DNA from: Girardia tigrina
Lineage: Eukaryota
Assembly (NCBI GenBank): GCA_001938485.1
Contig: MQRK01243438.1
Coordinates: forward strand, 19,233-70,023
Direction: 5' to 3'
DNA length: 50,791 bases
The position numbers and the translations under genes were made by a program. Position 1 is the first letter of the stretch; each line of letters opens with the position of its first letter. The notes under the pieces were generated by a model. That model searched no databases, was not told where the DNA came from, and was given only the letters and a program-made list of their open reading frames with translations. This document shows, piece after piece, positions 230 through 50,592 of this stretch.

Positions 230-387
230 TTTACTAGTTTAATATAAATTCGATATTTACATATAAAAATCGCCTTATCGAAACGAAAATAATAAAGACA
301 ACAATTAATAATATGAAAAATAAATAAAACAAAAGAATTTATTATTATTTCTTTTCTTGATTGAATATTTACACAAATATGAACACA

Positions 388-922
388 TCAGTCGGCATTA
401 TTCGAATAGTCCATTTCTCTCTTGATATTTGGTCCGCCGTTGTTACTGTGGTTGCCGTTGTTGTTCGTAGTACTGGTGCTACTCTCCTTGACATTATCCG
501 ACCGATTATTGTCGCCATTATCGTCTTTATAGCTCTTGTATTTGCCGGACTCTTCTTCGGGAGACTTGTGACGCCGTTGGTGTCGTTCTTTGCGGTTGTC
601 ATAGGAGCGCGAGCGGGACCGTGACTGTCGATGGCGCTTACTCGACCGATGTCGGCGGTGTTTTCTGTCACTGTCGCCCGACGAGTGTCGGTCGCGGCTG
701 TGCTTCCTGTGTCGCCGGCTACTGCTACTCTCCTCGGGGCTTCGGTTACGTTTTCTCGAGTGTTTCGATTCGTAACCCCGTTCTCGACTGCGAGAACGCG
801 ATCGACGCCGTCTTTCTGAGCTTCGTTCTCGCCGTTCTCGTGATCGGTATCGGCGAGATTCTTCATGGCGGCTCGAACGTTCTGCTTTGATGTAATTCTT
901 GCGATCGTAATCTTCATGGGAA
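388..922 (-). CDS. FIP1L1: FIP1 exon 7 (RE/RS-rich C-terminus)
   Basis: Frame HSHEDYDRK...[22 protein letters not shown]...NNAD*. This is a different frame from listed ORF 369-917. Confidence 0.9.
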
Positions 923-9900: not shown

Positions 9901-12900
9901 ATTTCATCAATAAAATATTTTATTTTAAAATGGCGTCTTTTAATTTTCCTAATTTCTGTTGTCTCTCTTCTCCGGGATCGATAACCAACACCCGCAAACA
10001 TCGCCAATATTCAGTCAATAAATAGTCGAACTTGGTGACTGCATATTGGAGATCGTCTTGTTACTGAGCATTTTCCGGGTCGTCAGTTTATATTTGATAC
10101 ACCCGTTTACAATTTATAAGGGCCCTTTTACATTAAATAAGGAATAATGAATCTATTTATAGATTCTATAATATTTTGTGATATTTTGTATTTTGGATAT
10201 ATGTTGAATTCTCAATAAAAAGTCAATAATAAGTAAGATTTTTTTAAATTAATTTTTTAATATTGATTTACATTTTATATACAACTTTTAATAATCAGTT
10301 TTTAACCTTCTAGCGGGCGCGCAGTCGTAAAATTTACGACAAATGCGCATTACAGCTTCCCCCTCTTATACCACTTAGTTATAAGCGGCGAGCTCCAACT
10401 TATTCGAAGGTCAGTGTCTCTCTAAACTACAGACGTATCGGGTGTGCTTAGAATTTTGTTATTCATTGATATTTGGGAATTTCCGTTGAGCGTAAATTTT
10501 ACAACACGCGCCTACCATATCATAAAACATGTAAGTACATTCAATAAACAACTTTTTTCTATTTATTTCTCGTTTATATAGTAGTTTTTTTACACTTTAA
10601 TGAATATTGCAGGCATAAATGCTCAAATTTTATACAAATTTGCATGCCCAGAAAAAGATCCAAAGCATAGAAGAATTTTTCTAAAAAAATTGGCATTGAC
10701 CATGATGAAAGAGCATCTTATCTTCAGGTCAAATGTCAAACATTTTCCGCAAGATATAACTGCTTTTCTCAAAGTTAATTACGGTCGGGAAGTTGAACCG
10801 ACAACAGAAGAAAGAATCCCTCCAAAACGCGGTGTCTGTCGGTCATGTGCACTGGAGAAAAAAAGATCCTCAGCATCAAGGAAGTGTTGCCGTTGNNNNN
10901 NNNNNNNNNNNNNNNNNNNNNNNNNNNNNNNNNNNNNNNNNNNNNACATGCAAGAACCATTCTGCATTTGAGGTGGTTTGTAATAATTGTAAGGATGAGA
11001 ATATTGATTCTGACTAAAACGTGGATAATTTTTGTTTTTTGTTGTTGATACAAGTGTTGTTTCGGTTTTTTTTTGTTTAGAAAGTCAAATATATTTTTTG
11101 TACATTACTGTTATTTATCATTTTGCGTAACCTTACAGCAATTCCCTTACATTTATATAAAGAAAACACCATTTACATGAAGAAAACTTGATGACGTAAA
11201 ATTTACGACAAGCGCCCGCTCCAGTGATGTTATTCAGCGCGTCCGCTGGAAGGTTAATAATATTTTTACAATAATCACAATTGTGAAGGTTTATCTTGGT
11301 ATTCCAGATTTTTTACGGGGCACATTTCAAAACGACAATTAATCAATTTTAAATAATTTTAAAAAAATGACAATAATAAATTATTTAAATATATTTTTAA
11401 CTTGTTTATTGTGATTTTTATCACAAATAACTAACATAAATTTATGAATAATAAATGATAAATGGTGAAACAATTTGTGTTCGGTCGAGGAGTCAAAGAT
11501 TAATCAAATAAATCATTTTTTAAATTAAGATTTAATCAAACAACTTGTATTAAAGAATTCAATATTCCCAAAACCCTTATAAAAATTAAATGCCCTAAAT
11601 GAATGTAAAAAAAATTTGTATGTATGACGTGTGTTTTTCATTGTGTTAGCGTGTCTGTCTGTATGTATATGTGTATGTTTTTATTTTTTCTGACCTTTCT
11701 ATATATTTGTGCCCTAATCCAATTTTAATGCCTTTTTCAAATGAAAAACAGGTTAATTTTGATTGGTTGTTTTTCATTTTTTTGCATGCTTTAGTTGTTT
11801 ATTTTTTTTTAATAGCGAAACTTTTTATAACGAGGATTTTTTGGATCTACATTTATAACTAATGATAGGATATTTTTATTTTATGATATCTGTTAATTAA
11901 TATAATAATAATTTATATAATAAATAATATTTTTTTTAGACATTTGTTAATTTAAATATATTTTTTTATTCATTTGCATTTGTCCATTAAATTATCTAAA
12001 TTATGCTTGATATTTAAAATTATAAGATTTATGAAATTTTTGAAATATTTTTTCAGTGTAGAACTTTTTTAATTGAAAACAAAAATTCAATTTCTAAAAA
12101 TATTTATTGATTTTTTAATTAAATTTAATGTATTTTTTTACTTTGGTAATTGTTAACAGAAATTTTTGAAAAATATGATTGATTTTTGTAATTTAAAATA
12201 AATTTATTAAAATATTTTGATTAAAAATTTTATTAAAAACTTAATTGAAAAATTTATGAAATTTGTATGTTTTTCATAAATTTTTCAATTAAGTTTTTAA
12301 TAAAATTTTTAATCAAAATAAATAAATTTATTTTAAATTACAAAAATCAATCATATTTTTCAAAAATTTCTTTTAACAATTACCAAAGTAAAAAAAAACA
12401 TTAAATTTAATTAAAAATTTTATATTGGTAAATGGACATTATATTATCAAATGGTCCTAATATAACGTGTGTATAGGTATGTATGAATGTGTTAAGGGGT
12501 AGAAAATATTATTTCATATATTTTCTATTCTCAAGTGGACATTTGAGTAAGTATGTTTTTTGGTTAAATATTTTGATTGGTTAAATTTTATTTTTCTATC
12601 AATTTTAGATATGGATTTACTATCAAATGGACTTCTTATATAATTAAATGGACCTCACTGTATATACACTTATTCAATTTAAATTTTCACTAATTATTTG
12701 TTAACAGGTGTAACATTAAAAATATTTCCAATCAAATTTGTTTCATTATTTTTTTAATTCTTTTATTTTAATTAATTATTTTCTCTATGGGAAATTGATT
12801 CTGCTTTTTTTGTAATAATTTAAAAATTACAAAACACCGAATTATCTGGAGTAATTTTTAAAATATTTTTTTTATTTTTCAGTTAATTTTTGATAATTTA

Positions 12901-14109: not shown

Positions 14110-14164
14110 GAATCGATTCGACACGTTAGTATCCTTTTTACACTATTTACTAGAAATTGAATTA

Positions 14165-16379
14165 CAGGGTTTTCCATTCAGTTTTGATATATTTGCATAT
14201 GATCTTCACAATTTATCAAATGGTTTTGAATTTATAAACTAATTTAATTTTTTTAATTTGGATTTTTAATGATATAAAAAACATTTTAAAATTTTTGTTA
14301 GTTAACATATATTAAATATGTTTTTATATGAAATTAAATATTATTATTTTATTGAATAATATAGGGATATTAATGTTTATGTTTAAAAGTTATATTCATC
14401 GAGTGTTTAGCATATTATAGTCATGTGCTTCTTAACAATATGTGTAGATAAAGAAGATACGATTGATGAATAATAAATTCTATATATTTAGTTCATGTAC
14501 ATTATTTTTTTATTTTGAATTATTTTTGTTAAATTTAAGTAATTCTGTAAAAAATTATTGTTTTTTATAGTACAGTAGGTATTGCATATATACCATTCGT
14601 CTATATGCAATTATTGCATATATGCAACTTTTCCTGAACCATATAGACGAATTGCATATAGGCAATACCTACAGTAAAGATTTGCTTATATGCAAGTTCG
14701 TCTACGTGGAAGTTTTTTTGCGGCACCAAGCGACTTGCATATAGACAATATCTACTGTATTAGAATTCGAAAAAAATAAAGAGATTGAAAATTTTTCAAA
14801 ATATATAAAAGAATTATTAAATTTATTTAAATAAATAAGTATTTGAAACATAAATTTCGTTGAGTGTCTTTTATTTTCCTCTTAAATTACGAGGTTTATT
14901 TACAGTAAAAATACTATATAAAGACAATAAATTATTAACAAAGAAATGATTAAAATGTTGGGGTATCGAGGTGATTAAAAAGATTAAAAGAAAATTAAAC
15001 AAGAAATTGTTTTTAATAAAAGAAATATTTAATTAAAATTTTTTCAAAGGAAATCATAACAAGTTTTAAATCTATACCTTGATTGATAAGGATTTTAAAT
15101 AGATGTCGGAACAACTAGTATCCACGTAATCAATTTAACTATATTAAAACATGTTGAATTTAATATATAAAATATAAAATTCAATAATGGTTTTTACCAA
15201 TTTTCAATTTGTTCAACCCTCTTCTTTTAAAGAGTAAGTTCCTTCGCTTATATATTAATAAGTGACCAAGATGTTTATTTCGCCTGTTAGGCCACTATGT
15301 CAGCACTTTAACAGTTTAATCCACCTAAGAAGATAATAATATATAATTTGGACTTTTATACTTCGTATTAAGTCTTTATGTTCGTTAATTAAATAATTAA
15401 AGTCGACTAAACCATATTCTTGAGGTCCTTACCTTTATCCTTTCCTTTATCCTTTCCATGATTTTTTAATCTTTCATTTTAAAATCTCTCTTTATAGTAA
15501 TCTTCTACTTTTAATTTAACTTTATTTATGATTTTCATTTTATTGTTTACATCATTCTTATAAATATTCTTCTTTTCTTATTCCTTTTATATACCATTTT
15601 TTATCTTTATTAATCTTTATTTATATTTATTTCATATTTAATTTTGTGAAAGAGTAAATAATTTTTTACTCCTTAATTAAAATAAATTATCATTTAAAAT
15701 TTAATTCAATCCTTTAACCTCAACAAAAATAAGCGATAACTGATTTTTTGTTAAACTGGGAATCTTATCAGCTACGCAGAATATTGATTTTAATAAAAAG
15801 GTTTTATTTATTATACTTAACAGTATAATGATAATGCAATTGTTTTGTTATTCTCGTTTTTTTTCATTTATGCTCATATGTCACTACTTGCTATCACATG
15901 TTATTATTTGTTTTATTAACGATTCGATCAAAACATTCATTTTTACCCGTCTTTTTTATAAATGGAAAAAACTAAAGTTTTCAAATTGTAAAATAAACTT
16001 TTATTTTTGGATAACATTTGTTATTTTTTTAGATCATTAAATTCCATATAAATGAATTTCTAATATATTTTATGTAAAAATGCGATTCGTGTATGAATAA
16101 ATTTTATTAGTTTTGTTCTATTATTCAAAGATTCTTAGACCTACCTTTGAAACATAAGTTTTCATATAACTATATTATTCAATAAAATAATAAAATTTAA
16201 TTTCATACAAAAACATGTTTAATATATTTTGACTAACAAAAATTAAAAATATTGTGTATTTTATTGAAAAGCAAATTAAAAAAAATTAAATGTGCTAAAA
16301 TTATTTTATAAATTGTCAAAATCATTTGAAACATCGTCAAACTGTATGAAAAAGTTTCAAAATTGAATAGAAAACCATG
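14165..16379. mobile_element. Tc1/mariner-type non-autonomous element with long (about 230 bp) diverged TIRs
   Basis: TA-CAGGGTTTTCCATTCAGTTTTGA ... TCAAAATTGAATAGAAAACCATG-TA; inverted homology 14165-14400 / 16140-16379. Confidence 0.7.
14573..14757. mobile_element. pogo/Tigger-like MITE
   Basis: TA-CAGTAGGTATTGCATATA ... TATAGACAATATCTACTG-TA with an additional internal TIR copy. Confidence 0.8.
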
Positions 16380-16391
16380 TAGTTGAGATTA

Positions 16392-17071
16392 CTACCTAAA
16401 TTCATATGTATTCGGACACGTAAAATAATTCTTATTAAAAATTTTAAATTATAAATAATATGTACTTATTTGTTTTATAGATGAACTAATTTGATATTTT
16501 ACGATAATCTAAATACAATTCTAATATAATTTGAAGAAATCAAATAAAAAAGTTAACTAATAAAAATTTTATTCGCATTTAAAAATTTGTTCTCAAATTC
16601 AAATGAATTCGGAGATCTGCTTTTCAGTTCAAAAGAATTCGGACACTTAATAAAAATTATAATATAAATGTAGGCAATGAATTATTTTAAATTCAATATG
16701 GATTATTAGTAAAAACACATGTAGTTATTATTGTTTAAGTATTTCAGTCGATTAAATTTTCGTTATTTTTAAAATATGGTTCGTGGAAAAATGATGCATA
16801 CGGAAATGCGTGAGAAAATATTTGCCATGCATGTTAAAGGAAAATCAGTAAGGGAAATTTCAAAAATTTTAGAGATAATTAATAAGAATTTTAGTTACTT
16901 AACTTTTTTATTTGATTTCTTCAAATTATTTTAGAATTGTATTTAGATTATCGTAAAATATCAAATTTAATTCATCTATAATACAAATAAGTACATATTA
17001 TTTATAATTTAAAATTTTTAATAAGAATTATTTTACGTTATAATAATTATAATACATATGAATTTAGGTAG
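16392..17071 (+). mobile_element. Internally deleted Tc1 element (IR/DR type)
   Basis: TA flanks, about 180-bp TIRs, repeated ATTCGGA motifs, HTH start MVRGKMMHTEMREKIFAMHVKGKSVREISKILEI at 16776. Confidence 0.85.
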
Positions 17072-17711
17072 TATAAATCAATTTATTCATTTATTAATTT
17101 ACGAGAAATTTTAACATTAAATATAACTTTATGTAAAATTAGTTTCAGATAATAAGAATTAAAATAATAATTATCCATATAAGTAGGAAAAGCACAATCC
17201 AAAATGAATACAATTGATTTTGATTTATGTAAAAGAGCTAACTGAAAACGTGTTTCAGTGAACTCCTTTAACGTAACAAAAAATAAAGATAAATATATAT
17301 AGAACTTTTATTTTTATACAATATAAATAAACATATATAACAAAAAAATCACATACGAGAGAGAGAATTGCATGGATAAATCTCGATTTCGATTAGTGTT
17401 TATTGTTCTAAGGTGTCAAAGGAACGACCTTCTGTTGTAACAATGCCAATGGAAACGTCAGAGAATCATTTGGTTGCACAACGAGATTTTGAGGAAATAG
17501 ATTATATGAAGAGATGCACTTTCAGGGGAAATAATAATCCAACAGCGATATAACGATTCTTCGGTACGGTGAATATCGACACTGGACGCTCGTTCTATCG
17601 CAATCGCTGATTTCGTGAATTTCTGATCGGTTTATGAAAAATCCGTATAGAAAATTCCCAATACTCACAAGGATACCGATAAATAATATTAATATCGATT
17701 TATTTATCTAT

Positions 17712-17860: not shown

Positions 17861-18220
17861 NNNNNNNNNNNNNNNNNNNNNNNNNNNNNNNNNNNNNNNN
17901 NNNNNNNNNNNNNNNNNNNNNNNNNNNNNNNNNNNNNNNNNNNNNNNNNNNNNNNNNNNNNNNNNNNNNNNNNNNNNNNNNNNNNNNNNNNNNNNNNNNN
18001 NNNNNNNNNNNNNNNNNNNNNNNNNNNNNNNNNNNNNNNNNNNNNNNNNNNNNNNNNNNNNNNNNNNNNNNNNNNNNNNNNNNNNNNNNNNNNNNNNNNN
18101 NNNNNNNNNNNNNNNNNNNNNNNNNNNNNNNNNNNNNNNNNNNNNNNNNNNNNNNNNNNNNNNNNNNNNNNNNNNNNNNNNNNNNNNNNNNNNNNNNNNN
18201 NNNNNNNNNNNNNNNNNNNN

Positions 18221-18665: not shown

Positions 18666-21600
18666 TAGGTTAACTGCCATATATAAATTAGAAAAAAATG
18701 CCCTAGAAGCCAAGTACAAAATACTCATAAAATGTATTTTTAAAAGAGTATATCTAAATTTTTATACAAATTTTTAAGAATAGGTAAACTTTTCCAAAAA
18801 ACAGTCGGAGGTCGAAGAGGTTGTGTTATTCGAGTCAGAATTTGTCAAGCAGTGACATGTCAGTCTATTGTGATTTGCATAAGCAACAGTTACAAAGACT
18901 AATCGAAGTAGAAGATCGTTGAACTTGCTTTGAAAGATGCCCAAAAGCAAGGTAATTATTATTCATTTTTTGAAAGATATATTGATAAATTGATATGGAT
19001 CAAAAAATATTGTCTTTTTTTGTATATATGAAAGCATTATGGCAGTTATTTTGATAACGATTTTTCTTATTATTTCAGGTTATAAATTTAGTTTATTTGG
19101 CTCTGATCTTTGCTCAATGTTTTTGCCATCTAGGGATGAAGAAATATTATCGAGTTCAGATTTCCAAGACTCAGAAGGGGGAACAGAATATTCCAAACGT
19201 AAAGCGAAGCTCAAACGTAAATTACAACCCAGTAAAACCATTTCAAAGAAACTGAATACTGGAAAAAAACAAGATTTTGATAAAGTATGCTGTTCCAAAT
19301 AACTTTTGTCTGCTGACGTCTGGCATGAAGAAATCGAAGACCTTGATGCCCCAACCCGTATTCTACCTGATTCTTTGGAAACAAACGGAAAACGATTATT
19401 TACAGATTTGTAAAATAACGGAAATATTTCATCAGAGCGATTGAAAGAATTCTTTGAAGTTGAAACGATAGCCCACACACAACCACCAAATACATAGGAT
19501 ATCCAGCAATCTGAAAATGAGGCTGAACTAAACCAAAACGTTCTTGAGTATACGTGGACGGAATCGGTAGGAAATCATCAAGAATTTCATTACTCCGAGG
19601 AGGGTGGTTTACAGGGAAATTACGCAGTAATACTTATAAATGAATTATTGCCCTATAACTGTTTCCGTACTTTCGTTGACAATGAAATTATTGTGGAGAC
19701 GGTAAATCAAACAAACCAATACGTAACTCAAGTATTGCGCGATTCAAAAGACATAAAGAAGGAATCAAGATTACACCGATGGACTCCAAGTGATAGAAAA
19801 GAAATGATCAAATTTTGGCCCAGTGGCTTACATTGGTTTGGTAAAAATGCCTTCATTGGAGAAGTATTGGATGAATGATGTCCTATATACGAATGTTATT
19901 ATACCAAAAACCATGTCGAGAAATAAGTTTCAATTGCTTCTTAGAATAGGGAATTTCTCTGATAATGAAAGTTTCCCAGAAAGCGACGGTCTATACAAGA
20001 TGAAGCCACTAGCAGAAAAGCTTGTTAAAAACTTTCAAAGGGTCTACACTCCTGGTCGGATGTTTCGTATAGATGAGTCTATTATTCCTTTTCAAGGGCG
20101 ATTGCTATTCAAGCAAAATATTTTATTAAAAACTCATAAGTATGGAGTAAATTTTTTTATAATTATGCAGCCACAATGGGTATAAATGGAACTTACGAAT
20201 ATATGCTGGAAAAGAAAAAAAATGATGGAAACACTTCTGTTCCCACTAATATTGTTATCAACCTCTCAAGGGATCTACTATATGTAGGACGAGCTATAAT
20301 AGCTGATAACTATTATACAAGTCTCGAATTATCAAATATTTTGTTGGACAATAAAACAAATTATACTGGTTCATTGAGAGCTAACCGGCGTGGTAATCCA
20401 TAAGAAGTTTCAGAAAAAGAAATTAAAAAAAGGGGAAGTGTATGGACAAGAAAACGAAAGAGGAGTATGCGTCCTAAATTGGAAAGAGAAGAGTGATGTT
20501 CTTCTTCTCACGCTCCTGAAACCGTAAATGTAGAGCGACGCACTGGTGTGATTCATAAACTGAAGGCAATAATCGAATATAACGATTGAAAATCGTCGAT
20601 TGATCAATCTGATTAGATGACCAGTAATAATTCTACCTTGAGAAAATCCATCAAATGGTATAGGAAACTCGATATAGAATTTATTTTAGGGACAACGCTT
20701 GTAAATTCACATATAATACGCAACCAACTTGCGAATAAAAAAATGAAAATTACAGAGTTCCGAGAAGAATAAGTTATCGTGCTCCCCTTTAAAACAACAT
20801 TAATGATGACACTAAGCCCCCATCCTATTTTCATTAGAGTTCAACGGCAACTCTATCAAACTAAACTAATTATATCTCAATGGGGAGCAGACGCGACTCC
20901 TTTGCTTGCATCAACGAGTTGTGCAAACATTAGAGCGCCTTCGGGTTCTTAACCAGTAACGAAGATGTCCCGACTGGTGGCTGAGCTTCTAGAGGGGATG
21001 ATCGTAACTTTAACGACTCAATTTCTCAAATTCGATTTTATTATCTCACGCCAGACAACGATACCTCAACGAGACAAATGACGGTCAGCCCACGTGTCCC
21101 TATGCATACTATGGTCTGCCTGCATCGTCTCCCTGAGTTCCTTGCCGAGCAGTGCCTTCATCATTAATCATAATTACACTCAGCTACTCCCGTTAACCTA
21201 CTTATATATACACTATATTTAATTACGTTTTACTGTATTCATCATATTCCATCAAATTCTATTACATGTTATTATAACTTTATTATATTCGCTCATCTTG
21301 GGGTCTAATTCGGGATAAAACTAACATCCGATGCGTATCGACTTACGTTTATCACAGAACTACAATTTCTCGATGGATTAATAAAAATAACTTTGATTGA
21401 ATTTTTAAATGACAATTCTACTCGACGCTTTTATCTCAGAAATAGTGAAAACCTTTAATTTAAAAGCTACGATTTCGCCCCTGATCATTGAACTAACTAC
21501 TGATATACAAAGTTATAGAAACGCTACACTCCTTCACTCCAACCATCAAACCAATAAAGATAATTTACAGTTAATACAAAAAGCAGTATTTTATTAAGAT

Positions 21601-23735
21601 GAACAATTTGAGACGCTTATTCTTGGTCAATCAACGATTCTGATTATCATTTCAACTTTACTTTTACCATACGGCATCTCTCTGAAGTTGACGACACCCT
21701 AGTTTATACTTTTGTCACCTTTTAATCGTCGCCTCAAAATTACTTTTCGACTTTAATTCTATTTAATCACCATTTGTAGTCCTAACGAGGACTGTGTCTC
21801 ATTCTCTCTAATTGATATCACGCCGCTCACATTTAAAATCATTAAAATTAGTATATAAGAAAAATAAAATAAGATAAAAAGAAATTTTTATTAGAAATTT
21901 ATTATTAAAAAAAATTTTTTTTGAAAGAAACGTAAGATTTACGAAAAGAATTACCATTACAAAGATTATAAATTAAATTAAAATTTATATCAAATTAAAA
22001 ATAATCCATTACGTTATTACGAAAATCCTTAAACAATTACACACTATTAAATTAATTAATTAAAAAAAAATCATTACAAACGAAGATAATCAAAATTAAA
22101 ACTGTCTGAGAATAATCAAATGTTAAAGATAACACCTAGCGCTAGATATAATGACACTCATTCGATACCGTACTCAAATATTAAAATCATTCAACCTGTA
22201 GAGAACGTCATATAAGAAAGTTTAATTAAATTGTTCATAAAATGATTACTCTGGAAGTATATACAAATATTTACACTGATTCCGTCCATACAATCTGATT
22301 ACGTACCTTAACTCAAGGACCGCATCACTCGATCCCTTGAATACGGAGACGAATCACAATCGTACTTCCGATTCTCAAGTATCATTGAGTCCATCCCGGT
22401 ATCAATCATAACGTTATTAAATAATATTATGAAACGAATCAAAGACATTACTAAGAATAATAAATTATATATTTAATTGAAGTCGATTACCTCAACCGAT
22501 AAATAAAATCGCACCTCTAATTAATAAAATGAAGACATATATAACTTCGGATCACTAACTCAAATAACAAATGATAAAATAATAATTTAAGTCACCAAAG
22601 TCGATTGGTATAAATATGCGAATCAATAACAATTAGATTGAGCCAAAATGAAATAATTAAATTAAGCCAGAGTAAATAAATTAGATCACTAGAATTATGA
22701 GCGAAATAATCATTGTGATTAAATAAGCGAATAATACATGATAATTAAATTAAATAAAAAGAAGGTAAATTAAACCCAAAAGTACTGACAATACCTTCTC
22801 TAAACTCTTCTTTAAATTAATGGTAATAATCGTCTTCTCTAATTTCTTCTCCAAATTAACAATAGTATTCGTCGGATAAATAGACTATATTAACGCGAAT
22901 TTGAAAATCGTCTTGCAGCTAATATGTCGTAATACGAATGAAGAATGAATTCGTCTAATGAATAATTTATCGTAAAATAAATGTTAACGAAAGTAGATTT
23001 TTGGATTTGTGGGCAGGCATGTGCAGATTGTGTCGGGTATTTATACCCTACCGCAAGCTTCGCTGGCTCGGCATCCTGTCTTGCGGGTGCAACATCTATA
23101 ATCATGCAGGATGTTCGATGCCAATTCTTTATTCTGCCGACCGTTCATGCCGGATGTTTACCGCGAAGGTAAACAATAGCGAATGCTACGATTTCACATG
23201 GAATTCTCGTGTGAACTTTTAGGTAAATTTTTTAATTAACTTCTTAATTAGTTTCATCTTTGTTTTTCTTTTTAGGTCTTTTCAATGGTCTCTCAAGGGT
23301 TCCTGTCAACGTTTTCCGGCTCCTGGGACCTTCCATCCTACTGCTGGTCCAGCGCATATGAAGGGATTTAAAACTAACGGGCATAATCGAGTTTGATTAT
23401 CCCCACAAACTCTGACAAAACTCTCATACGCGTGGGATAATGTAATGGGTGGAAGGGAGTTACTTAGTGAGGTGTAAAACATGGAATCGTAACAAAGTGA
23501 TATACCTTTTAACTTATGACGAAAATGAGACAAGGCAAATACCATTATATAAAAAAAACAGCACAAATTCTTAATTTGCATAAAAAAGAAGGTCCTTTTG
23601 ACAAAATCAGAAAATATTGTAAAGGTTGTTATGCAAAAAACCTTCGGGAAAAAATAACCAATAATCAAATCAAAAAGGTTGTGACCTATTGTTCTACATG
23701 CGAGATTCATTTGTATCTGGAATGTTATAAGATCA
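18666..23735 (+). mobile_element. piggyBac (PGBD4-like) transposase pseudogene interrupted by the 20775-23494 insertion
   Basis: MSRNKF, IDESIIPFQGR, HKYG, ADNYYTS, GSLRANR, KWYRKL, TEFREE motifs in 19530-20774, resuming at 23499 with the Cys-rich domain RKYCKGCY...TYCSTC. Left end TTAA-TAGGTTAACTGCC is tentative. Confidence 0.9.
20775..23494. mobile_element. Giant solo-LTR-like non-coding element, copy 1 (2.7 kb)
   Basis: TATCGTGCTCCCC (TG changed to TA) ... GGAATCGTAACA; 4-bp TSD AAGT; piggyBac sequence rejoins across it; homologous to 38221-44129. Confidence 0.85.
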
Positions 23736-23960
23736 TCGATCTTGGCTTCATCGATCTATTATTGGTCGATTGCCGATGGAATTCTAACGGAAATCCGGTG
23801 ATCCCGATCATCGAAAATATCTGATCGCGAATCGTCGCCGCAACAGAATCGTTAAAATCGAAATACAAATTATCGAACAGTCGGAGTCTGTGGGCGACAC
23901 GTTTGAGCGGGGCGGACGCGATAATTTACGCGATCGATATCGGTGATACCGGTCATCTCA
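23736..23960 (+). pseudogene. ARF/ARL-like small GTPase fragment
   Basis: RSLWATRLSGADAIIYAIDIGD resembles the ARF-family RSLW..Y..ADAIIYVID.SD segment; CpG-rich like host exons; in-frame stop. Confidence 0.4.
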
Positions 23961-24044
23961 AGTATTTTTAAATGTTTTTGTATACTTAAGCGTTCGTTTT
24001 TGTTACGTGTAGTGCAACATGTTCTTTGTTTTCAATAAAAAATA

Positions 24045-38220: not shown

Positions 38221-41200
38221 TGTCGTGCTCCCCTTCAAAACAACATTTTCGTTGGCTCTGAGTCCCCATCCGTTTTCTTAGAGTTCAACGGCAACTCTAA
38301 TTCTCAATACTTCTCTACATAGACATTCACTACACTTGGGGAGTAGACGCGCCTCCTTTGCTTACATCAACAAGCTGTGTAAACATTAGAGCGCCTTCGG
38401 GTTCTTAATCAGTAACGAGGATGTCCCGACTGGTGGCTGAGCTTCTAGAGGGGATGATTTCAACTTTTTCGACTCAATTCCTCAAATTTGATTTTATTAT
38501 CTCATGCCAGACAAAGATATCTCAACGAGACAAATGACGGTCAGCTCTCGTGTCCCTATGCATTCTATGGTCTGCCTACACTGTTAACCTAAGATCTTGT
38601 CTGAACAGTAACTTCGTCTTTTTTTACAACTACATGTATGTTCCACTCATATATGAAACTTTGTGTCTCAATTATATTTAACGGTTAATTATATATACCT
38701 TATCTTATTATATTTATCAAATTCGATTGCATTTTATTATATTGGTTATATTCGTTTATGTTGGAGAACTAATTTTCATCGTTTGATTTATGTTTAGGGC
38801 AAACTCATATTTTATATACATCAACCCACACTCTGAGCGATAGCAAAGTATAATCTTGGCGTGAAATTTGAAACTTGACTTCAATTTTGTAATAACGATC
38901 GACTTTTGAAATAACAATTTCGGCCCGAATTTCTGACTTCATTTTTATCATATACCATACTAGTTTACATTTTGATCATGTTATTTTAAGCATTATCTTG
39001 AGGTTAACTTTCAAGTTTAACTTCACTCTTTTTTTCTCAATTCAATCATCATCTATTGTAGTCCTGACAAGGACTGTGTCTCATTCCCTCATAACACCTT
39101 GACATCATGCCGCTCATATTTCACCTTCTCAGCTCAAATCTTTATCAACACAATTTCTCGTTTTAGAAAATTTCTTTTGATAGCATTTAACTATACATAG
39201 AATCCACTTTAAGGTCATAAAGCTTATAGGATTGTAACCACAGAAATTATAAAACAATTAATAAAATTTTTAATTATCGAACGAATTTACAATTGAGAGC
39301 GGCGCATATAATTTTAAGTTAGAAACCATTACTTAATTCGAAACGTTAATTAAATCAAAGATCTTTAAAACTGTATTACGATTAAATCAAATCAACTACA
39401 ATTAAATCATTTATAAATTAACTCAACATCAAACTATAAACCAAGACGAAATTGAAAATGAAATTGTTTTTATATCAGTTTTTAGTTGATCATTAATTTC
39501 CGTTTAATTTAGTTTATTTTCAATTTCAATAAGTTTTTCTTTAAATTCTCTGTGATTACTCTCATATTTTATCTTGGAATTTTCACAAATTTTTTTATTT
39601 TTAAATGTATCTTTTGCCATTGATTCTATTTTTTCATTCATTGTTTTCATATCAGTATTAATTGTGAAGGCGGATTTTAAATATAACTCTAACCATTGAT
39701 GTACACTTTTTACATTAGTTCGAACTAAGATTTATGTTTCATGATACATTAGCGATGAAAGGCAAAGAGAATTCCAAAGAAACAAACGTCGGACTGCCCG
39801 CATGCCCCTTGCATGCTACGAGCACCCTACGTCGTTACCGAAGGTCCTCTGTCCCCATCATATTCAAATGATATTTTATATTTGCATTTATATGCAAATA
39901 TAAAATATCATTTGAATATGATGGGGACAGAGGACCTTCGGTAACGACGTAAGGTGCTCGTATATATATATATATATGTTGGTGTATTTTAAATTTATTG
40001 CTGGGTATTGAATTATAGTTTTAAATATGTCTATTCAAAGAAAATATATAATTCTCTATTTAATCCACTTTAATCGAAGGCTGCGTTGCTTGTTCGTAGC
40101 TCGAACCCAGCTCAATATTTGATACTGTAAATTTTATTTGCAATTGAGATCAAATAACAAATATTATAAAAAATTATATTTGATAATCACAAAATTTGTA
40201 CATGAATCTTTACTATAAACTGAGGTTGAATAATGATTTGCTTTACTCTTCTTTTAAGTTTTATATTTTTATATTTGATTTTTGAATATTATTTTTGCTT
40301 TTATTTTTTTGTGTGTTGTGATTGAATTTTTGAAGAGTATTTATTTATTTATTATTATTTATTTACTTATATAATAATAAATATATAAAATTTAAAATAT
40401 TATTTAATTAAAAATAATTTTAATTTTTTAAATTATTAAAAATTTTAATTTTGATTTAAGCCACCATGTGGCACAAATTATTAAAATTTTAATGATTGCC
40501 TATCACTAGGCTAATTATAATTTGTGAAATTTTGCCACCATGTGGCACTAATTAGTTATATAAATTGGGAATTTGTTCCCATAAATCTTTTCAAGTCAAA
40601 AATTTTTGACTTTCAACTGGGTATGACGAGACTCGCCGATTGGTAAAGTCAATCAGCAAACGTCATCCCAGTGGAAGTCTTTTGGAATTAATTATTATTT
40701 TTCTTTTCTTCAAAAAAAAGGTAAGTTCTGTTTATAGTAATAATAATACTTTTAATAATAATAATAATACAATTTTTATAATTATAATAAAAATTTAAAG
40801 AAACTAATAATATAATATTTATAATATTTATAATATTTATATAATATTTATTAATAATAATAATAAATATTTTTTTTGAATGAAGATAAACCTTTGGCGA
40901 ACTTCTCCGTCCAAAGCAGGAGTACCCTCATAATGAATGGGTCCCTGTGGAGGAAGGAAAACCTCGCCGATAAGGAATATAATAATATTAATTCTAAGAA
41001 TACTAATAATGATATAATAAAAATAATTATGATAGTGATAAAATTAATAATTATGAACAATAATTATAATAGTAATTACACTAATAATAATAATAATTAT
41101 ACAAATGATTATAAAAATAATATTATTAATAAAGATATTAATTATATCAATATTATTGATATTAATAATAATTTAGATTCTAATAATTTTAGTAATAATA

Positions 41201-41469
41201 ATAATAATATAATAAAAAATAAATAAAGATAAAATTAATAATGTCATAACTTAATATTAAATTAATACTGATGATAAATAATAAATATTTACTAAGATTT
41301 TTTATATATATTTCTTTATTATTATTATCCAAATTAACCGCCTCGCATCCCTGAGCGACCTGCTCAAACAAAGGGAAGGTTAAAATGGGATTATCCGTCC
41401 TGTTTATTTGATTTATTTATTTATTATTTTTCTTAATTTTTTATTTAGGACAATGGGTACGCTCATTTA

Positions 41470-41512
<43 letters not shown>

Positions 41513-44129
41513 TTACATAATCCCAACATATATATNNNNNNNNNNNNNNNNNNNNNNNNNNNNNNNNNNNNNNNNNNNNNNNNNNNNNNNNNNNNNNNNN
41601 NNNNNNNNNNNNNNNNNNNNNNTATTTCATATTCGACACTCAGCGCTTCAAATACTTTAACCATTTTCGATCAGGATTATTTAAATGTTTAAACCCTACT
41701 CACGCAAATACTCAACAGGTAACGATGTTTTGTCTAATTACAAATCGATAAGCAAATCGTTTTATTCAAAATGATTTATTCAAATATTCGCATTTTAGTC
41801 AACAAAATAAAACGATCGACAATAATATTTTATTCAACACATTTTTAGTAATTCGCGAAGAAACTCGTTTTTTTTCACGAACTCTCATCTTCAACTGTCT
41901 CACTCTCACAATCAGTCTTGGCAGTCTTCTTTTATAATATCTCACGCTTTTCTTGTACTCGCACATCTTTCTGTATCTTTTCAGATCATATTATTCGGAA
42001 TAATTTCATGTTTACATTACTTCATATTTTTCACATAAGTTATATTATCCATGTTAATTTTCTATTCATACTGTTTCATGTTATTCACATAGATCATTCA
42101 AATATCTTTATCAGGTGTAGCCATTTATTCGCAGAACATTTAGGCACTCTCAAAATATAGTCCAACACAATTAAGCAACTCAAAATTTAGATAAAAGTTA
42201 TAAAAAGAAAATCGATTATCAAATAAAAATCGTTAGTATTTCTTTACAAAATAAAATTAATCAGAGATTAAATCGATTAAATTCAAATCTTAATAAAATA
42301 AAACTGTATTAATGAATTTTTTTAATGAAATTATAAAATATTTATTAAAACATTACTACAAAGTATTATTATTCATAAAATATTATTAAGACTATTAAGA
42401 ACACCAATTTGATTTTTTATATTTTTATTTAAACAACAATTTTGATTGTCCTCAAGACAATTTTTGTCAAAACTTTCGTACATTTGCATTCAAAGCGAAA
42501 TTGATTAATAGTTTTAATTCTTATTACTTTTTTAGAAAATGGGGAAATAAATATTTAAATAAAATATTCACTCAAAACTTATTGGATAATAATTAAAATG
42601 ATAATTAATAATTTAAAAAATATTAATTTGATTTATTTATTAAATATTATAAAANTTAATTAACTTATTTAAAATTTTAAAATTATATGAAATTAAAAAT
42701 AAATTTAAACATTACATATTTTTAGATAATAAGAATTAAAATATTAATCATCCATCTGGGTAGGAGAGACACATCTCCAAATCAACATACACATTCAAAC
42801 ACAAAACATCAAACATTCAAATATTCCTCACAAAGACAAAATTAATAGATCAGTGGCAGAATTAGTGACAATAATATATACAATAATAAAGTCATCATCA
42901 TATTAATTCTCCATTAACTTCATAATCTGCTATGTACATTATTTGCAAGAGCTACATGCGAATCAATTACACCTCGGAGTCCAAGGACCCTCCCTCCTGA
43001 TCCCTTGGACACAGAAGTAAACTGTGTTCGCATCTTCACCCCCTTGGACCGTTAACCTCGTCGTCCATGGCAGTTCGACTCGACCTCAACAATTTGATAT
43101 TCATACTCAAGACATAATTCAGGTTATTACTAAGTCGGAACATTGATGAAAATTTCGTTTGAAGAATTAATGAAATTATAATGTTCAAAACTTTTATTGG
43201 AAACACTCCAGATTATAGAAATGAAGTAAATAGCATAAAAAATTTTTTTAAAAATTAAATCAAAATTATTTAATTAAAACAAAATAAATAAAGTTATGAA
43301 GTACAATAAAATCAAAATAAAATGCAACGGAGATAAAATTACGTCACCAATAATCAACTAGTATTATACCTCCCAATATCGAATAATTTCGCCAAATAAT
43401 TTCAATCAAGTAATATTCGTCAAATAATTTCAACCAAAAGTGATGGGCTTGTAACAAAAGATTTAAATGAAATAAAATATCGTAAATTGTAACTGGCTGG
43501 TGAATTGTGTTTTATTGTGCACAACTTCGGCATGTATTTATACCTCCCGGATGTGCACAATCCTGGGCGAGCTCGGGCATCTGGTGCATGTCACCCCGAG
43601 GCAGGATGCTACGACATCCGCGATTCGCGGATATACTGTTACTTTAATGCAGTAGTTTACGCGGGTTACCCACAATCGTAAACAATTTTTTTCGTTATTT
43701 CTAATTATTTAAATTTTCAGTTCGGATGTTTAGGCTAGCCGGCTCTATCCACAGAGACGATGTACGGACGGTGTCCTTCATGAAACGGTGCAACACCGGA
43801 TAATCACGAACTGTCTGGATGATGTTATGATTCACATTGAATCGTCGAGGTGATTTTAACTAATTTAATTAAAGATCATTAATTTTTTATTTCGTTTCTA
43901 GAAAGCCTCAAAGGAATTTCAGAAGATTGCAAGGGGTTTTCGGATAAAAGTACTCATTCCCAAGGATCCCTCACTTTATTCTCCGTCCGGCGCGCATGGA
44001 ATCATTTAAAACTAACGGGGATAGTCGAGTTTGACTATCCCCACAACTCTGACAAACTTTCGTGCGCGCGGGATAGTGTACATTGGAGAAGGGGTTCTGG
44101 ATTTGATGTGCAAAATGTGGAACGTAAAA
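38221..44129. mobile_element. Giant solo-LTR-like non-coding element, copy 2 (about 5.9 kb including a gap and probable nested inserts)
   Basis: TGTCGTGCTCCCC ... GGAACGTAAAA (CA changed to AA); 4-bp TSD AAAC; five co-linear blocks shared with copy 1. Confidence 0.85.
39817..39962. repeat. 146-bp near-perfect palindrome followed by (TA)n
   Basis: 71-bp arms with one mismatch and a 4-nt loop. Confidence 0.95.
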
Positions 44130-44734
44130 AAACATAAAATATACCAATAAGGACAACGCAGCAGTTTCTGGAGTTAAAAATCTTTCTATGGCCTATATGG
44201 CTGTAGCCACCTTTGTAACCACTCCTGAACCCGTTAAATTTCGGAATTTCGATGTATGTTAAAACAAGAACCTGTGAGAAGACAAATGCAATTTTGAGAC
44301 ACTGATGTGCATCATTACCAGCACATGAACGAAAGGGTCACCTATTTCGTCCAACAAGTCTACGGCAATGCATTAATGCTAGTGAAAACATTTTTGAGTC
44401 AGTGCTGAACAATCATGTTGGGCTTGAAATAAATATGCTTTGGTGCGTTACCATAGTACATAGTGTTTTATAGACAAGTTAAATTAAAAAAAACTCTGTG
44501 CTGTTTAAGACCACACAGAGTAATACTTCTCGTCTTATGTGGATAGTTCTTTTTCAGGTATTTCTATTATATCACAAAAATTCTATCTTAACAATCCTAA
44601 CAATAGATATTGCACCCATAACACCATAATGAATTAAAAAATACATTTACCATTAATATTCAATTTATTGTCCAAAATCAAAAATAAGTTTTGAGATTTA
44701 CAGAATTATATAAGTCAATTGGTTTATTAAAGGA

Positions 44735-44832
44735 ATGAAATAGATGTTTTAGAGCTTTGATACTAATTACATTTGATAATTATTATAATTTATAGAAACT
44801 ATAACTATACAATAACAATAATCTTAATGATT
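44735..44832 (+). repeat. About 97-bp direct repeat, partner at 48975-49071
   Basis: ATGAAATAGATG(T/A)TTTAGAGCTTTGATACTAATT...TCTTAATGAT nearly identical in both places. Confidence 0.9.
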
Positions 44833-48600: not shown

Positions 48601-49173
48601 TAGTTCGATATAAAAATTTGGAAAACCCTTTTAGTGTTCTTAATATTCCTAAAATCCATTTAGACGGTAATTTCAAACCACTAAAATAAGCAAAATCTGT
48701 TAAAAACACAACAAATAGATTTAGTTAGAGTTAATTATCTTCCGATATTCTTTCAACATCCATCTAAAGCATTTGTAATTTCAGTTCAATGAAGAACTAA
48801 ATTTAAACTTACGCAATAAAACGTATTTCACTAAAACGTTTATTTGGTCATTAATTGTACTTATGAGAGACTCTGCCTTGATCTGTCAGTTCACATTGAG
48901 CAAGTGTTAGCGAGAATAATTAATTGTAATGTCGGGTCCTTGTGTTATACGAGATCAAATTGAATGATCAGCCCATGAAATAGATGATTTAGAGCTTTGA
49001 TACTAATTATATTTGATAATTATTATAATTTATAGAAACTATAACTATGCAACAAAAATAATCTTAATGATAAACGTCTTTTCACCAAGTGAATAAATTC
49101 CAATGTCACTAAACAAGACATTTTAATACATAAATTAAACCATATCTCTATTTAGCGAGCATTTGATTACTAT

Positions 49174-50592
49174 GGTGAGGCAACTTTACCGCGAATTTTT
49201 TCAGATTTTTAATTAAGATATTTTTTGCCATTATTACCGAATAATGCTTTATTAAAATATAATAATTATAATAAAATTTTCCATTTACGTTTAAAAATAT
49301 ATCTTAAAATATTATAAATTTCTTAAAATTTTTCTCTCACTGTTTTTTTCAGCATGAATCTTCAATTCTTTACTTCAAAATCTGGAAATCCGATTGTTGC
49401 GTATGCAGGTTATTCTTATCGCTTTGATTATGATTTAAAATCCCTAGATGGAAAATTCTGGCGCTGTGTTGTTTATGAACAACATAAGTGTAAAGGAAAA
49501 ATTCGTACTTCAAACAACAACGAGGCATCTATTATTTTAGGTCACCCTTCTGAGCATAATCATGCTCCTGAGCCAGGTAAAGTTGTCGCTAGGCACATTG
49601 CTCAGGGGATTGCAACTCGTGCATCGCAGACAGTAAAGGCCCCGAGGCAAATTATTCAGAAATCTAGGACTGGGATTCCACTTGACGCTGCAATATTTCT
49701 TCCAAGTTATCGCTCTAGTCAACGTATAATTCAACGAAAAAGAAAACAAGAGAATGCTCCTTGGCCAAATTCAAATCATCTTTCAGAAATAAATGTTCCT
49801 GAAAATTTGAGGCTTACAACTAGAAATGAATCTTTTTTGATACTCGATTCTGGATCTAATGATGCCAACCGGATAATGCTCTTCAGTACAATTGCAAAAA
49901 CATAAATCTGATGGCTTCTTGTGAAATTGGGTTTATAGATGGGACATTCTCTGTCATCCCTCGATTATTTTACCAAGTTTATACTACATACTTTAAAATC
50001 AAACAAAGTATTCCCTCTTGTTTATGCATTGATGACTAATAAAACTCAATTAAATTACACTCGTATGTTTGAAGAGCTTTTAAGACAACAACCAAATTTA
50101 AATCTACAAACTATTATGATGGATTTTGAAAAAGGAGCAATGAACGCTGTTTCCACTGTATTTTGTAATGCTACTGTTAAATGCTGTTTTTTTTCATCTG
50201 AATCAATCAATTTGGAAAAAAAATAAAAGAAACAGTTTAATGTTTTTGTATCTTTCTTCAATTTACACATCACATTTTTTGGGTTATTTGAATTTTTTAA
50301 ATTAGGAATTTACTAATTTTTCGTATGTTGTTTGTTTGTTTTTTTTATTAAAAAGAATAATTAAATGTCATGTCCATCTGAAATTTTCTATCCATTTATG
50401 TTTTCAAATTAAAACCTTATTATGATTCATTGTTTTATCATTACATAATTAAAATTTATATATATATTTTAGATGACATTGTTTACTTTTTGACAATTTT
50501 GTTGTAAATTTTCCGCGATAAAGTCACCTGCTACAAAGTCGCCCGCGATAAAGTCGTCCGCGGTAAAGTCGCCGCGGTAAAGTCCGGGTACC
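49174..50592 (+). mobile_element. MULE/Mutator element with FLYWCH-MULE transposase pseudogene (49354-50226)
   Basis: 9-bp TSD GATTACTAT (49165-49173 / 50593-50601); GG...CC ends with ACTTTACCGCG subterminal repeats; FLYWCH FWRC...HKCKG...HNH; DGTF, FPLVYALM, DFEKGAMNA across frameshifts. Confidence 0.93.

What the first reader, a model, noticed from the sequence alone, without database searches (positions are those of the whole stretch)
20775..44129. Family of giant non-coding TG..CA elements (solo-LTR-like) keeping an ordered array of covarying RNA structures
Seen: two insertions (20775-23494, TSD AAGT; 38221-44129, TSD AAAC) share both termini and five co-linear blocks: A 20775-21150/38221-38600, B 21774-21834/39056-39121, C 22311-22341/42979-43010, a TATA block, and E 23360-23494/44000-44129. 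The kilobases between the blocks are AT-rich and align poorly. No credible ORF. Known: TG..CA ends with 4-bp TSDs point to Gypsy-type integrase, and multi-kb LTRs occur in giant elements such as planarian Burro and plant Ogre. Inference: modular conservation with compensatory changes implies selection on an RNA. It could be a large structured UTR/packaging RNA or an LTR-encoded lncRNA system I do not recognise as described.
Basis: partly seen in the sequence, partly recalled or inferred. Interest (0 to 1): 0.85.

Follow-up and report, generated by a model that had tools for sequence, protein, structure and literature searches.

The report
Two decayed solo-LTR-like insertions
Two old non-coding insertions in a transposon-crowded, AT-rich invertebrate-type genome region look like leftover single LTRs of one retrovirus-like transposon family; this is ordinary, and only one of the claimed RNA structures holds up.

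Summary
The two insertions are real. Copy 1 (20775-23494) and copy 2 (38221-44129) share both ends, each has its own matching 4-base flanks (AAGT, AAAC), and neither has a credible ORF. Three shared stretches are statistically solid: A, B and a 3' region D-E. Block C is not significant on its own, and the TATA block is patchy.

The termini fit the published integrase-recognition consensus of LTRs at 13 of 14 positions. There are no terminal inverted repeats, no internal LTR pair, no PBS and no PPT. Solo LTRs of a Ty3/Gypsy-like family is therefore the best reading, but no third copy or full-length element could be found in any collection I could search.

The "array of covarying RNA structures" is not supported:
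- **Block E** has a robust nested stem-loop (z down to -7), equally good on both strands.
- **Block A core** is about 90% identical but folds no better than shuffles.
- **Block B** is a 6-bp hairpin with an invariant stem.
- **Covariation** cannot be tested with two copies. There are 2 compensatory pairs of 26, which shuffles reach often.

Copy 2's size is unreliable. It spans an assembly gap and holds a perfect palindrome and a stray A-like fragment. The finding is ordinary, with low interest.

The parts
20775..23494 (+). Copy 1, solo-LTR-like insertion (2720 bases), ends TA...CA
   Evidence: Shared ends with copy 2. No ORF longer than 86 aa. No internal direct repeats or TIRs.
20771..20774 (.). 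Left copy of the 4-base target duplication AAGT of copy 1 (right copy at 23495-23498)
   Evidence: Read directly.
23495..23498 (.). Right copy of the target duplication AAGT of copy 1
   Evidence: Read directly.
20775..21310 (+). Block A of copy 1. The core, about 20881-21135, is about 90% identical to copy 2.
   Evidence: blastn E 1e-113. Window identities. No excess folding.
21734..21834 (+). Block B of copy 1, containing a 6-bp hairpin with an invariant stem and a variable loop
   Evidence: blastn E 1e-14. Single-sequence fold z -0.5. Consensus-fold z -3.2 on the + strand, with no compensatory pair.
22311..22341 (+). Block C of copy 1 (weak, not significant alone)
   Evidence: E 3.1. Fold z -0.7.
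23037..23047 (.). Shared TATA-like 11-base motif of copy 1. It is nearly palindromic and reads as a better TATA box on the minus strand.
23223..23275 (+). AT-rich island (17% GC) bounded by GT...AG in copy 1. It may be a short intron or the AT-rich R stretch of an LTR; neither is tested.
   Evidence: Inference only.
23347..23438 (.). Block E nested stem-loop of copy 1 (outer stem plus 10-bp inner hairpin)
   Evidence: -25.7 kcal/mol, z -2.9 on +, z -3.3 on -. Consensus fold.
23435..23494 (+). G/T-rich, C-poor tail of copy 1 ending in CGTAACA
   Evidence: G+T 58%, C 7%. The end matches YNYAACA (PMC3601003).
38221..44129 (+). Copy 2, solo-LTR-like insertion with a composite interior. Ends TG...AA. 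The length is an estimate because of the gap.
   Evidence: Gap 41536-41622 and single N at 42655.
38217..38220 (.). Left copy of the target duplication AAAC of copy 2 (right copy at 44130-44133)
44130..44133 (.). Right copy of the target duplication AAAC of copy 2
38221..38774 (+). Block A of copy 2
39011..39121 (+). Block B of copy 2
39755..39849 (+). Diverged extra fragment resembling the 3' part of block A, inside copy 2
   Evidence: nhmmer E 1.2e-6. Alignment.
39817..39962 (.). Perfect palindrome (71-base arms, 4-base spacer) beside a (TA)n run. It is either a foldback or an assembly artefact.
   Evidence: Only sub-threshold Rfam miRNA-model hits.
41536..41622 (.). Assembly gap inside copy 2, between blocks B and C
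   Evidence: Continuity not testable.
42979..43010 (+). Block C of copy 2 (weak)
43534..43544 (.). Shared TATA-like motif of copy 2
43850..43901 (+). AT-rich GT...AG island of copy 2, at the position aligned with that of copy 1
   Evidence: Inference only.
43985..44074 (.). Block E nested stem-loop of copy 2 (12+4 bp outer stem, 11-bp inner hairpin)
   Evidence: -45.7 kcal/mol, z -7.0 on +, z -5.5 on -.
44070..44129 (+). G/T-rich, C-poor tail of copy 2
   Evidence: G+T 62%, C 7%.
19498..23821 (+). Decayed piggyBac-type transposase pseudogene into which copy 1 is inserted. It is a neighbour, not part of the element.
   Evidence: DDE_Tnp_1_7 hits left of copy 1. The last left-flank piece aligns weakly to piggyBat transposase residues 428-470 of 578. 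The right flank carries a Cys-rich C-terminal-like motif, seen by eye only.
31609..32760 (+). Remnant of a Ty3/Gypsy-type pol gene (RT and RNase H domains) between the two copies. It is not shown to belong to the same family.
   Evidence: RVT_1 E 8e-19. RT_RNaseH_2 E 3e-14. Relatives are named Ty3, opus and 297 pol.

Best explanation
The two sequences are independent, old, decayed solo LTRs from two diverged sublineages of one LTR-retrotransposon family, probably Ty3/Gypsy-like.

Inferred history: each came from a full element that integrated with a 4-base target duplication, then lost its interior and one LTR by recombination between its two LTRs.

The shared modules are the parts an active lineage must keep:
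- the two ends, which are integrase recognition sites;
- a promoter-proximal region with a TATA-like motif;
- an R/U5-like 3' region with an AT-rich stretch, a stable nested stem-loop (block E) and a G/T-rich tail.

The AT-rich centre of U3 is free to vary. A long 5' U3 module (block A) is also conserved for a reason that is not RNA folding. Possibilities are regulatory DNA, a linear RNA signal in the 3' untranslated part of the genomic RNA, or mosaic recombination between sublineages.

Shown: the copies, ends, flanks, blocks, the E structure and the absence of coding capacity. Inferred: LTR origin, U3/R/U5 assignment, strand and every function.
For: - **Separate insertions.** Each copy has its own matching 4-base flanks (joint chance about 5e-5).
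- **LTR-type ends.** The ends fit the published LTR short-inverted-repeat consensus TGTTRNR...YNYAACA. The 5' end TGTCGTG matches 6 of 7 and the 3' end CGTAACA matches 7 of 7. The 3' end equals the rGmr1 motif CGTNACA (PMC3601003).
- **No other architecture.** There are no terminal inverted repeats beyond TGT/ACA and no internal direct repeats. There is no credible ORF.
- **LTR-like motif order.** The order TATA-like motif, AT-rich stretch, stem-loop, G/T-rich C-poor tail, end motif matches the LTR grammar of PMC3601003.
- **Real structure in E.** Block E beats shuffles. The same paper links residual conservation in R regions to stem-loops.
- **Uneven identity.** Identity ranges from 90% in the A core to unalignable in the centre. 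Uniform decay after insertion cannot produce this, so it reflects divergence in the active lineages.
- **Known LTR sizes.** Multi-kb LTRs are documented: Ogre 1.9-6.5 kb, and Burro more than 30 kb in total with an internal region of up to 25 kb (PMC6431247).
- **Host context.** A Ty3/Gypsy-type pol remnant lies in the same window, so such elements live in this genome.
Against: - No third copy and no full-length element with paired LTRs, PBS, PPT and gag-pol was found. All public scans and ORF-based protein searches came back empty, so the defining feature of an LTR is untested.
- Neither copy has both TG and CA intact.
- There is no AATAAA on the + strand between the TATA-like motif and the 3' end of copy 1.
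- The TATA-like motif is nearly palindromic, so the strand is uncertain.
- A 540-base conserved 5' U3 module is unusual, because U3 is normally the least conserved part.
- Copy 2 may be a scaffolded composite.
Confidence: 0.65

Rival explanations
1. The element family carries an ordered set of several RNA structures kept by selection on a long non-coding or packaging RNA, visible as compensatory base changes.
For: - Block E folds far better than shuffles in both copies and as a consensus (z about -5).
- 2 of 26 pairs on the + strand change on both sides and stay paired. 3 more change on one side and stay paired. None breaks.
- The block B hairpin keeps its stem while the loop changes.
- The minus-strand E consensus has 4 compensatory pairs, with P 0.015 against column shuffles.
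Against: - With two sequences, 123 of 500 shuffles reach the observed covariation, and 26% of column-shuffled alignments reach 2 compensatory pairs.
- Both strands fold equally well, so an RNA and its strand are not shown.
- Paired and unpaired columns of E differ at similar rates, 7 of 52 against 9 of 40.
- The A core shows no folding signal: z +0.3, +1.9, -1.1 and -0.5, and consensus z -0.3 and -1.3.
- B and C folded alone are at shuffle level.
- C is not significantly similar between the copies.
- There is no Rfam match.
Confidence: 0.12
2. The two copies are the 5' and 3' LTRs of one giant element of about 23 kb (20775-44129). Its interior would hold the Gypsy-type pol remnant on the same strand, later invaded by other transposons.
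For: Both copies and the RT/RNase H remnant lie on the + strand, with the remnant between them.
Against: - The outer flanks do not match (AAGT against AAAC), while each copy has its own matching pair.
- Copy 1 is flanked on the left by piggyBac-type transposase sequence (weakly). Its right flank carries a Cys-rich C-terminal-like motif, seen by eye only.
- By eye, there is no tRNA-complementary primer site right after 23494 and no purine tract before 38221.
- The copies are 10-35% diverged and unalignable in the centre. That is far more than LTRs of one insertion with intact duplications would show.
Confidence: 0.02
3. A non-autonomous non-coding element that is moved as a whole by a retroviral-type integrase, or a cut-and-paste or rolling-circle transposon (Ginger-like, Sola, Chapaev or Helitron types), rather than a recombination remnant of an LTR element.
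For: 4-base duplications and TGT/ACA ends also occur in integrase-encoding DNA transposons (my knowledge). No paired-LTR parent was found.
Against: - There are no terminal inverted repeats beyond 3 bases and no internal LTR pair as in TRIM or LARD elements.
- The target duplications and the ends do not fit Helitrons (my knowledge).
- The ends fit the LTR consensus on both sides.
Confidence: 0.08

Closest known systems
LTRs of animal Metaviridae (Ty3/Gypsy) as modelled by Benachenhou et al. 2013 (PMC3601003)
   Same: Short inverted end motifs fitting TGTTRNR...YNYAACA. An AT-rich or TATA-like core promoter stretch. A G/T-rich stretch near the 3' part. A poorly conserved U3. Residual conservation tied to stem-loops.
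   Different: Much longer (2.7 kb or more). No clear AATAAA on the + strand. A 540-base conserved module at the 5' end of the presumed U3. No parent element known.
Long LTRs of giant Gypsy-like elements: plant Ogre (LTR 1.9-6.5 kb) and planarian Burro (PMC6431247)
   Same: Multi-kb non-coding LTR size. AT-rich invertebrate-type host in the Burro case. One flatworm protein is among the named relatives of the neighbouring RT, which is weak evidence.
   Different: No sequence comparison with Ogre or Burro LTRs was possible here. The source organism is unknown. The neighbouring pol remnant is not shown to be Burro-like.
R/U5 stem-loops of retroviruses and LTR retrotransposons (for example TAR and poly(A) hairpins, U5 inverted-repeat stems; my knowledge)
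   Same: [quoted passage not shown]
   Different: No sequence or Rfam relation. The strand and any transcript are unproven. Function is untested.
TRIM and LARD non-autonomous LTR elements
   Same: Non-coding, with LTR-type ends and duplications.
   Different: Those have two LTRs plus PBS and PPT. Here there is no internal direct repeat.

Membership tests
LTR of an LTR retrotransposon (solo LTR) | Ends 5' TG...CA 3' within short inverted repeats that fit the integrase recognition consensus | tested here: met
   The composite fits at 13 of 14 positions. Each copy has one mutated terminal dinucleotide: TA...CA in copy 1 and TG...AA in copy 2.
LTR of an LTR retrotransposon (solo LTR) | Target-site duplication of 4-6 bases flanking the single LTR | tested here: met
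   AAGT/AAGT and AAAC/AAAC.
LTR of an LTR retrotransposon (solo LTR) | The same sequence occurs as a direct pair around an interior with PBS, PPT and gag-pol elsewhere in the genome | not testable with these tools
   No eukaryotic genome collection can be searched by DNA here. Pattern scans and ORF-based protein searches found nothing.
LTR of an LTR retrotransposon (solo LTR) | Internal promoter and polyadenylation signals (U3-R-U5 grammar) | tested here: inconclusive
   A TATA-like motif, AT-rich stretch and G/T-rich tail are present in order. There is no AATAAA on + in copy 1, only ATTAAA in copy 2. The TATA-like motif is nearly palindromic.
TRIM / LARD non-autonomous LTR element | Own pair of terminal direct repeats with PBS and PPT | tested here: not met
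   No direct repeat links the two ends of copy 1.
TIR DNA transposons with 4-base duplications (Ginger1, Sola, Chapaev) | Terminal inverted repeats of tens of bases | tested here: not met
   Only TGT/ACA is inverted at the ends.
Any Rfam RNA family (including hammerhead ribozymes of Penelope-like pLTRs) | Covariance-model match | tested here: not met
   No match at gathering score in the window. None at E up to 1 in copy 1. Only sub-threshold miRNA-model hits on the palindrome in copy 2.
   Two sequences give no power. Only E has a structure above shuffles, on both strands. The A core does not.

The most novel reading that the evidence does not exclude
The family is an unusually long LTR, or an LTR-derived non-coding element, that carries three things: a roughly 250-base ultra-conserved non-folding module at its 5' end, a conserved short GT...AG AT-rich island that is a true spliceosomal intron inside R/U5, and a selected nested stem-loop. 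Together these would amount to an LTR-borne spliced non-coding transcript unit that has not been described.
Probability: 0.08. Interest if true: 0.5.

Novelty: new member of a known kind. Interest (0 to 1): 0.18.

Why it matters
As it stands, this is routine repeat annotation. It adds one long, uncatalogued LTR-like family to a transposon-dense region, and it marks the region 20775-44129 as a stack of nested mobile elements rather than a single system.

It would matter modestly if a genome-wide set of copies showed that block A or the E stem-loop is under selection, or that the AT-rich island is spliced. Long LTRs are poorly understood, and their U3 regions are usually thought to be unconstrained.

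Tried and rejected
**Searches for more copies, all empty**
- Exact-pattern scans with the best conserved stretches of A and E in viral contigs, metagenome contigs and genome contigs.
- A word-indexed protein search with a chance ORF of block A.
- A full HMMER search of 1.84 billion representatives with a chance ORF of block E.
- nhmmer profiles of the blocks against the window. This found only the two copies, the E palindrome on the opposite strand, and one stray A-like fragment.

They found nothing and fetched nothing, and I did not use that road again.

**Source organism, not identified**
- Exact look-up of two window ORFs found nothing on record.
- The mariner search gave its best hit at 85% identity on a 1.2 kb metagenome contig.
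- The RT search gave mostly unnamed metagenome hits. The named ones were Trichobilharzia at 50% identity and spiders and a bee at 35-46%.

**Other checks**
- Coding reading of block A rejected: differences show no three-base periodicity (read) and there is no shared ORF.
- Rfam: nothing.
- tRNA genes: none.
- Nothing suggests human DNA (29% GC, invertebrate-type transposons).
- My first label of the ORF 32950-34152 (-) as hAT-like came from memory. Pfam and PDB did not confirm it, so I withdraw it.
- The Grohme 2018 Burro paper is not held in the library.
Gaps were left as they are.
Full report
**Setting**

The window is 29% G+C and has ten runs of N. It is crowded with transposon remains:
- a MULE domain at 4328-5065;
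- a decayed piggyBac-type transposase from 19498;
- two mariner-type pieces at 24449-24886 and 26966-27901;
- a Ty3/Gypsy-type RT plus RNase H remnant at 31609-32760;
- a FLYWCH ORF at 49327-49902.

Two host-gene-like pieces are also present: a Fip1 motif exon at 5777-6175 on the minus strand and a RIO domain ORF at 37552-38109. Nothing suggests human DNA. The source organism could not be named.

**The observation**

Two co-oriented sequences share their ends and several collinear stretches.

| Stretch | Copy 1 | Copy 2 | Identity | E-value |
|---|---|---|---|---|
| A | 20768-21310 | 38214-38774 | 77% (core of about 250 bases near 90%) | 1e-113 |
| B | 21734-21834 | 39011-39121 | 75-80% | 1e-14 |
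| 3' region D-E | 23183-23496 | 43822-44131 | 66% (E core 83%) | 1e-25 |
| C | 22314-22347 | 42982-43015 | 71% | 3.1 |

- Block C is not significant on its own.
- The TATA block is an 11-base shared motif followed by patchy similarity with many indels.
- The centres align only as AT-rich low complexity.
- Each copy has its own matching 4-base flanks, AAGT and AAAC. The joint chance is about 5e-5.
- Copy 1 reads TA...CA and copy 2 reads TG...AA, so the TG..CA of the finding is a composite.
- There is no credible ORF in either copy.

**Gaps**

The gap 41536-41622 sits inside copy 2 between B and C. Copy 1 has nothing alignable there, so continuity cannot be tested. Only block order and the matching flanks speak for one element, and the length of 5.9 kb is an estimate.

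Copy 2's interior is also composite. It holds a perfect palindrome with 71-base arms next to a (TA)n run (39817-39962). It holds a diverged extra fragment resembling part of block A (39755-39849, nhmmer E 1e-6). It also holds a small AT-rich repeat shared with 17069-17203.

The gaps at 25457-26224 and 33351-33397 lie between the copies. Frame continuity across the latter cannot be known.

**What it is**

- The ends fit the consensus of LTR short inverted repeats published by Benachenhou et al. (TGTTRNR...YNYAACA). The match is 6 of 7 at the 5' end and 7 of 7 at the 3' end. The 3' end equals the rGmr1 motif (PMC3601003).
- Only TGT/ACA is inverted at the ends. No direct repeat links the two ends of copy 1. 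This excludes TIR transposons and TRIM/LARD-type mini-elements.
- Copy 1 sits inside the piggyBac-type pseudogene. Pfam hits lie to its left. The last left-flank piece aligns weakly with piggyBat transposase residues 428-470 of 578. The right flank carries a Cys-rich C-terminal-like motif, which I saw by eye and Pfam did not confirm.
- The order of features in the 3' region is: TATA-like motif, AT-rich stretch, stem-loop, G/T-rich and C-poor tail (G+T 58-62%, C 7%), then the end motif. This is the LTR grammar described in PMC3601003.

The best reading is two independent solo LTRs of two diverged sublineages of one family. Identity ranges from about 90% to unalignable along one pair of copies. 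This cannot come from uniform decay after insertion, so it reflects constraint or recombination in the active lineages. The defining test, paired copies around a gag-pol interior with PBS and PPT, could not be run.

**Not one giant element**

The outer flanks AAGT and AAAC do not match. No primer-binding-like site follows 23494 and no purine tract precedes 38221 (read). The copies are far too diverged. The pol remnant between them has its RT and RNase H parts in different frames (at least one frame break). No protease, integrase or gag was detected in neighbouring ORFs. Nothing ties it to this family.

**RNA structure claim**

- **Block E** is a nested stem-loop that beats shuffles. Copy 2 gives -45.7 kcal/mol and z -7.0. 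Copy 1 gives -25.7 kcal/mol and z -2.9. The minus strand gives z -5.5 and -3.3. The consensus fold beats column-shuffled alignments by about 5 sd on both strands.
- **Compensatory changes on the + strand** number 2 of 26 pairs, with 3 one-sided changes and none broken. However, 123 of 500 shuffles reach this, and so do 26% of column shuffles.
- **The minus strand** gives 4 of 30 pairs, with P 0.015.
- **Paired and unpaired columns** differ at similar rates, 7 of 52 against 9 of 40.
- **The A core** folds no better than shuffles on either strand in either copy.
- **Block B** is a 6-bp hairpin with an invariant stem. C is a short hairpin. Both are at shuffle level when folded alone.
- **Rfam** gives nothing.

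One structure is real, as an inverted repeat at least. Covariation and an RNA strand are not shown, and an "ordered array" is not supported.

**Mechanism proposed (inferred)**

- The ends serve as integrase sites.
- The TATA-like region serves as core promoter.
- E and the G/T-rich tail are R/U5 elements of the kind that act in 3' end formation, strand transfer or primer use in retroelements.
- Block A is a constrained U3 module of unknown kind.
- An AT-rich island bounded by GT...AG at aligned positions (23223-23275 and 43850-43901, 17% GC) could be a short intron or simply the AT-rich R stretch. Only transcript data can tell.

**Comparison and novelty**

Long LTRs are known. Ogre LTRs are 1.9-6.5 kb, and Burro is more than 30 kb in total with an internal region of up to 25 kb (PMC6431247). 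Modular LTR conservation with stem-loops is described in PMC3601003. I could not compare with Dfam or Repbase. I rate this a new member of a known kind, with low interest.

I did not fetch genomic loci of the RT relatives found, because I could not tell whether that counts as fetching a provirus of an animal. Two early pattern scans of viral contigs found and fetched nothing, and I then stopped using that road.

Noticed in passing
window 39817-39962: Perfect palindrome (71-base arms, 4-base spacer) beside a (TA)n run inside copy 2. It draws many sub-threshold Rfam miRNA-model hits. It is either a foldback element or an assembly artefact.
   Followed up: partly
window 39755-39849: Diverged extra fragment resembling the 3' part of block A, in the same orientation, about 630 bases after block B of copy 2. 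Copy 1 has no counterpart.
   Followed up: partly
window 23223-23275 and 43850-43901 (also 43678-43720): AT-rich islands (16-17% GC) bounded by GT...AG with pyrimidine-rich 3' ends, at aligned positions in both copies. They could be introns or the AT-rich R stretch of an LTR.
   Followed up: partly
window 17069-17203 vs 42645-42781: AT-rich stretch of about 140 bases shared at 72% identity between copy 2's interior and a site near the 17861-18220 gap. Possibly another small repeat family.
   Followed up: partly
window 12112-12417; 16390-16573 / 16881-17073; 14151-14392 / 16142-16394: Other inverted self-matches at 77-94% identity, suggesting foldback or TIR-type elements upstream of the finding.
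   Followed up: no
window 32950-34152 (-), continuing to about 34795: Open frame of about 400 aa across the gap 33351-33397, with no Pfam or PDB match. It abuts the 3' side of the Gypsy-type pol remnant. My first impression of a hAT-derived protein was not confirmed.
   Followed up: partly
window 5777-6175 (-) and 37552-38109 (+): A Fip1 motif exon and a RIO kinase domain ORF. The latter looks degenerate and ends about 110 bases before copy 2. These are host genes or pseudogenes among the transposons.
   Followed up: no
window 44735-44831 vs 48975-49071: 97-base direct repeat at 95% identity, 4.2 kb apart. The second copy lies about 250 bases upstream of the FLYWCH ORF (49327-49902).
   Followed up: no
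window 372-923 (-): Weak D5_N (primase-helicase N-terminal) Pfam hit, E 0.007 and below the cut-off, in the relatively GC-rich first 2 kb.
   Followed up: no
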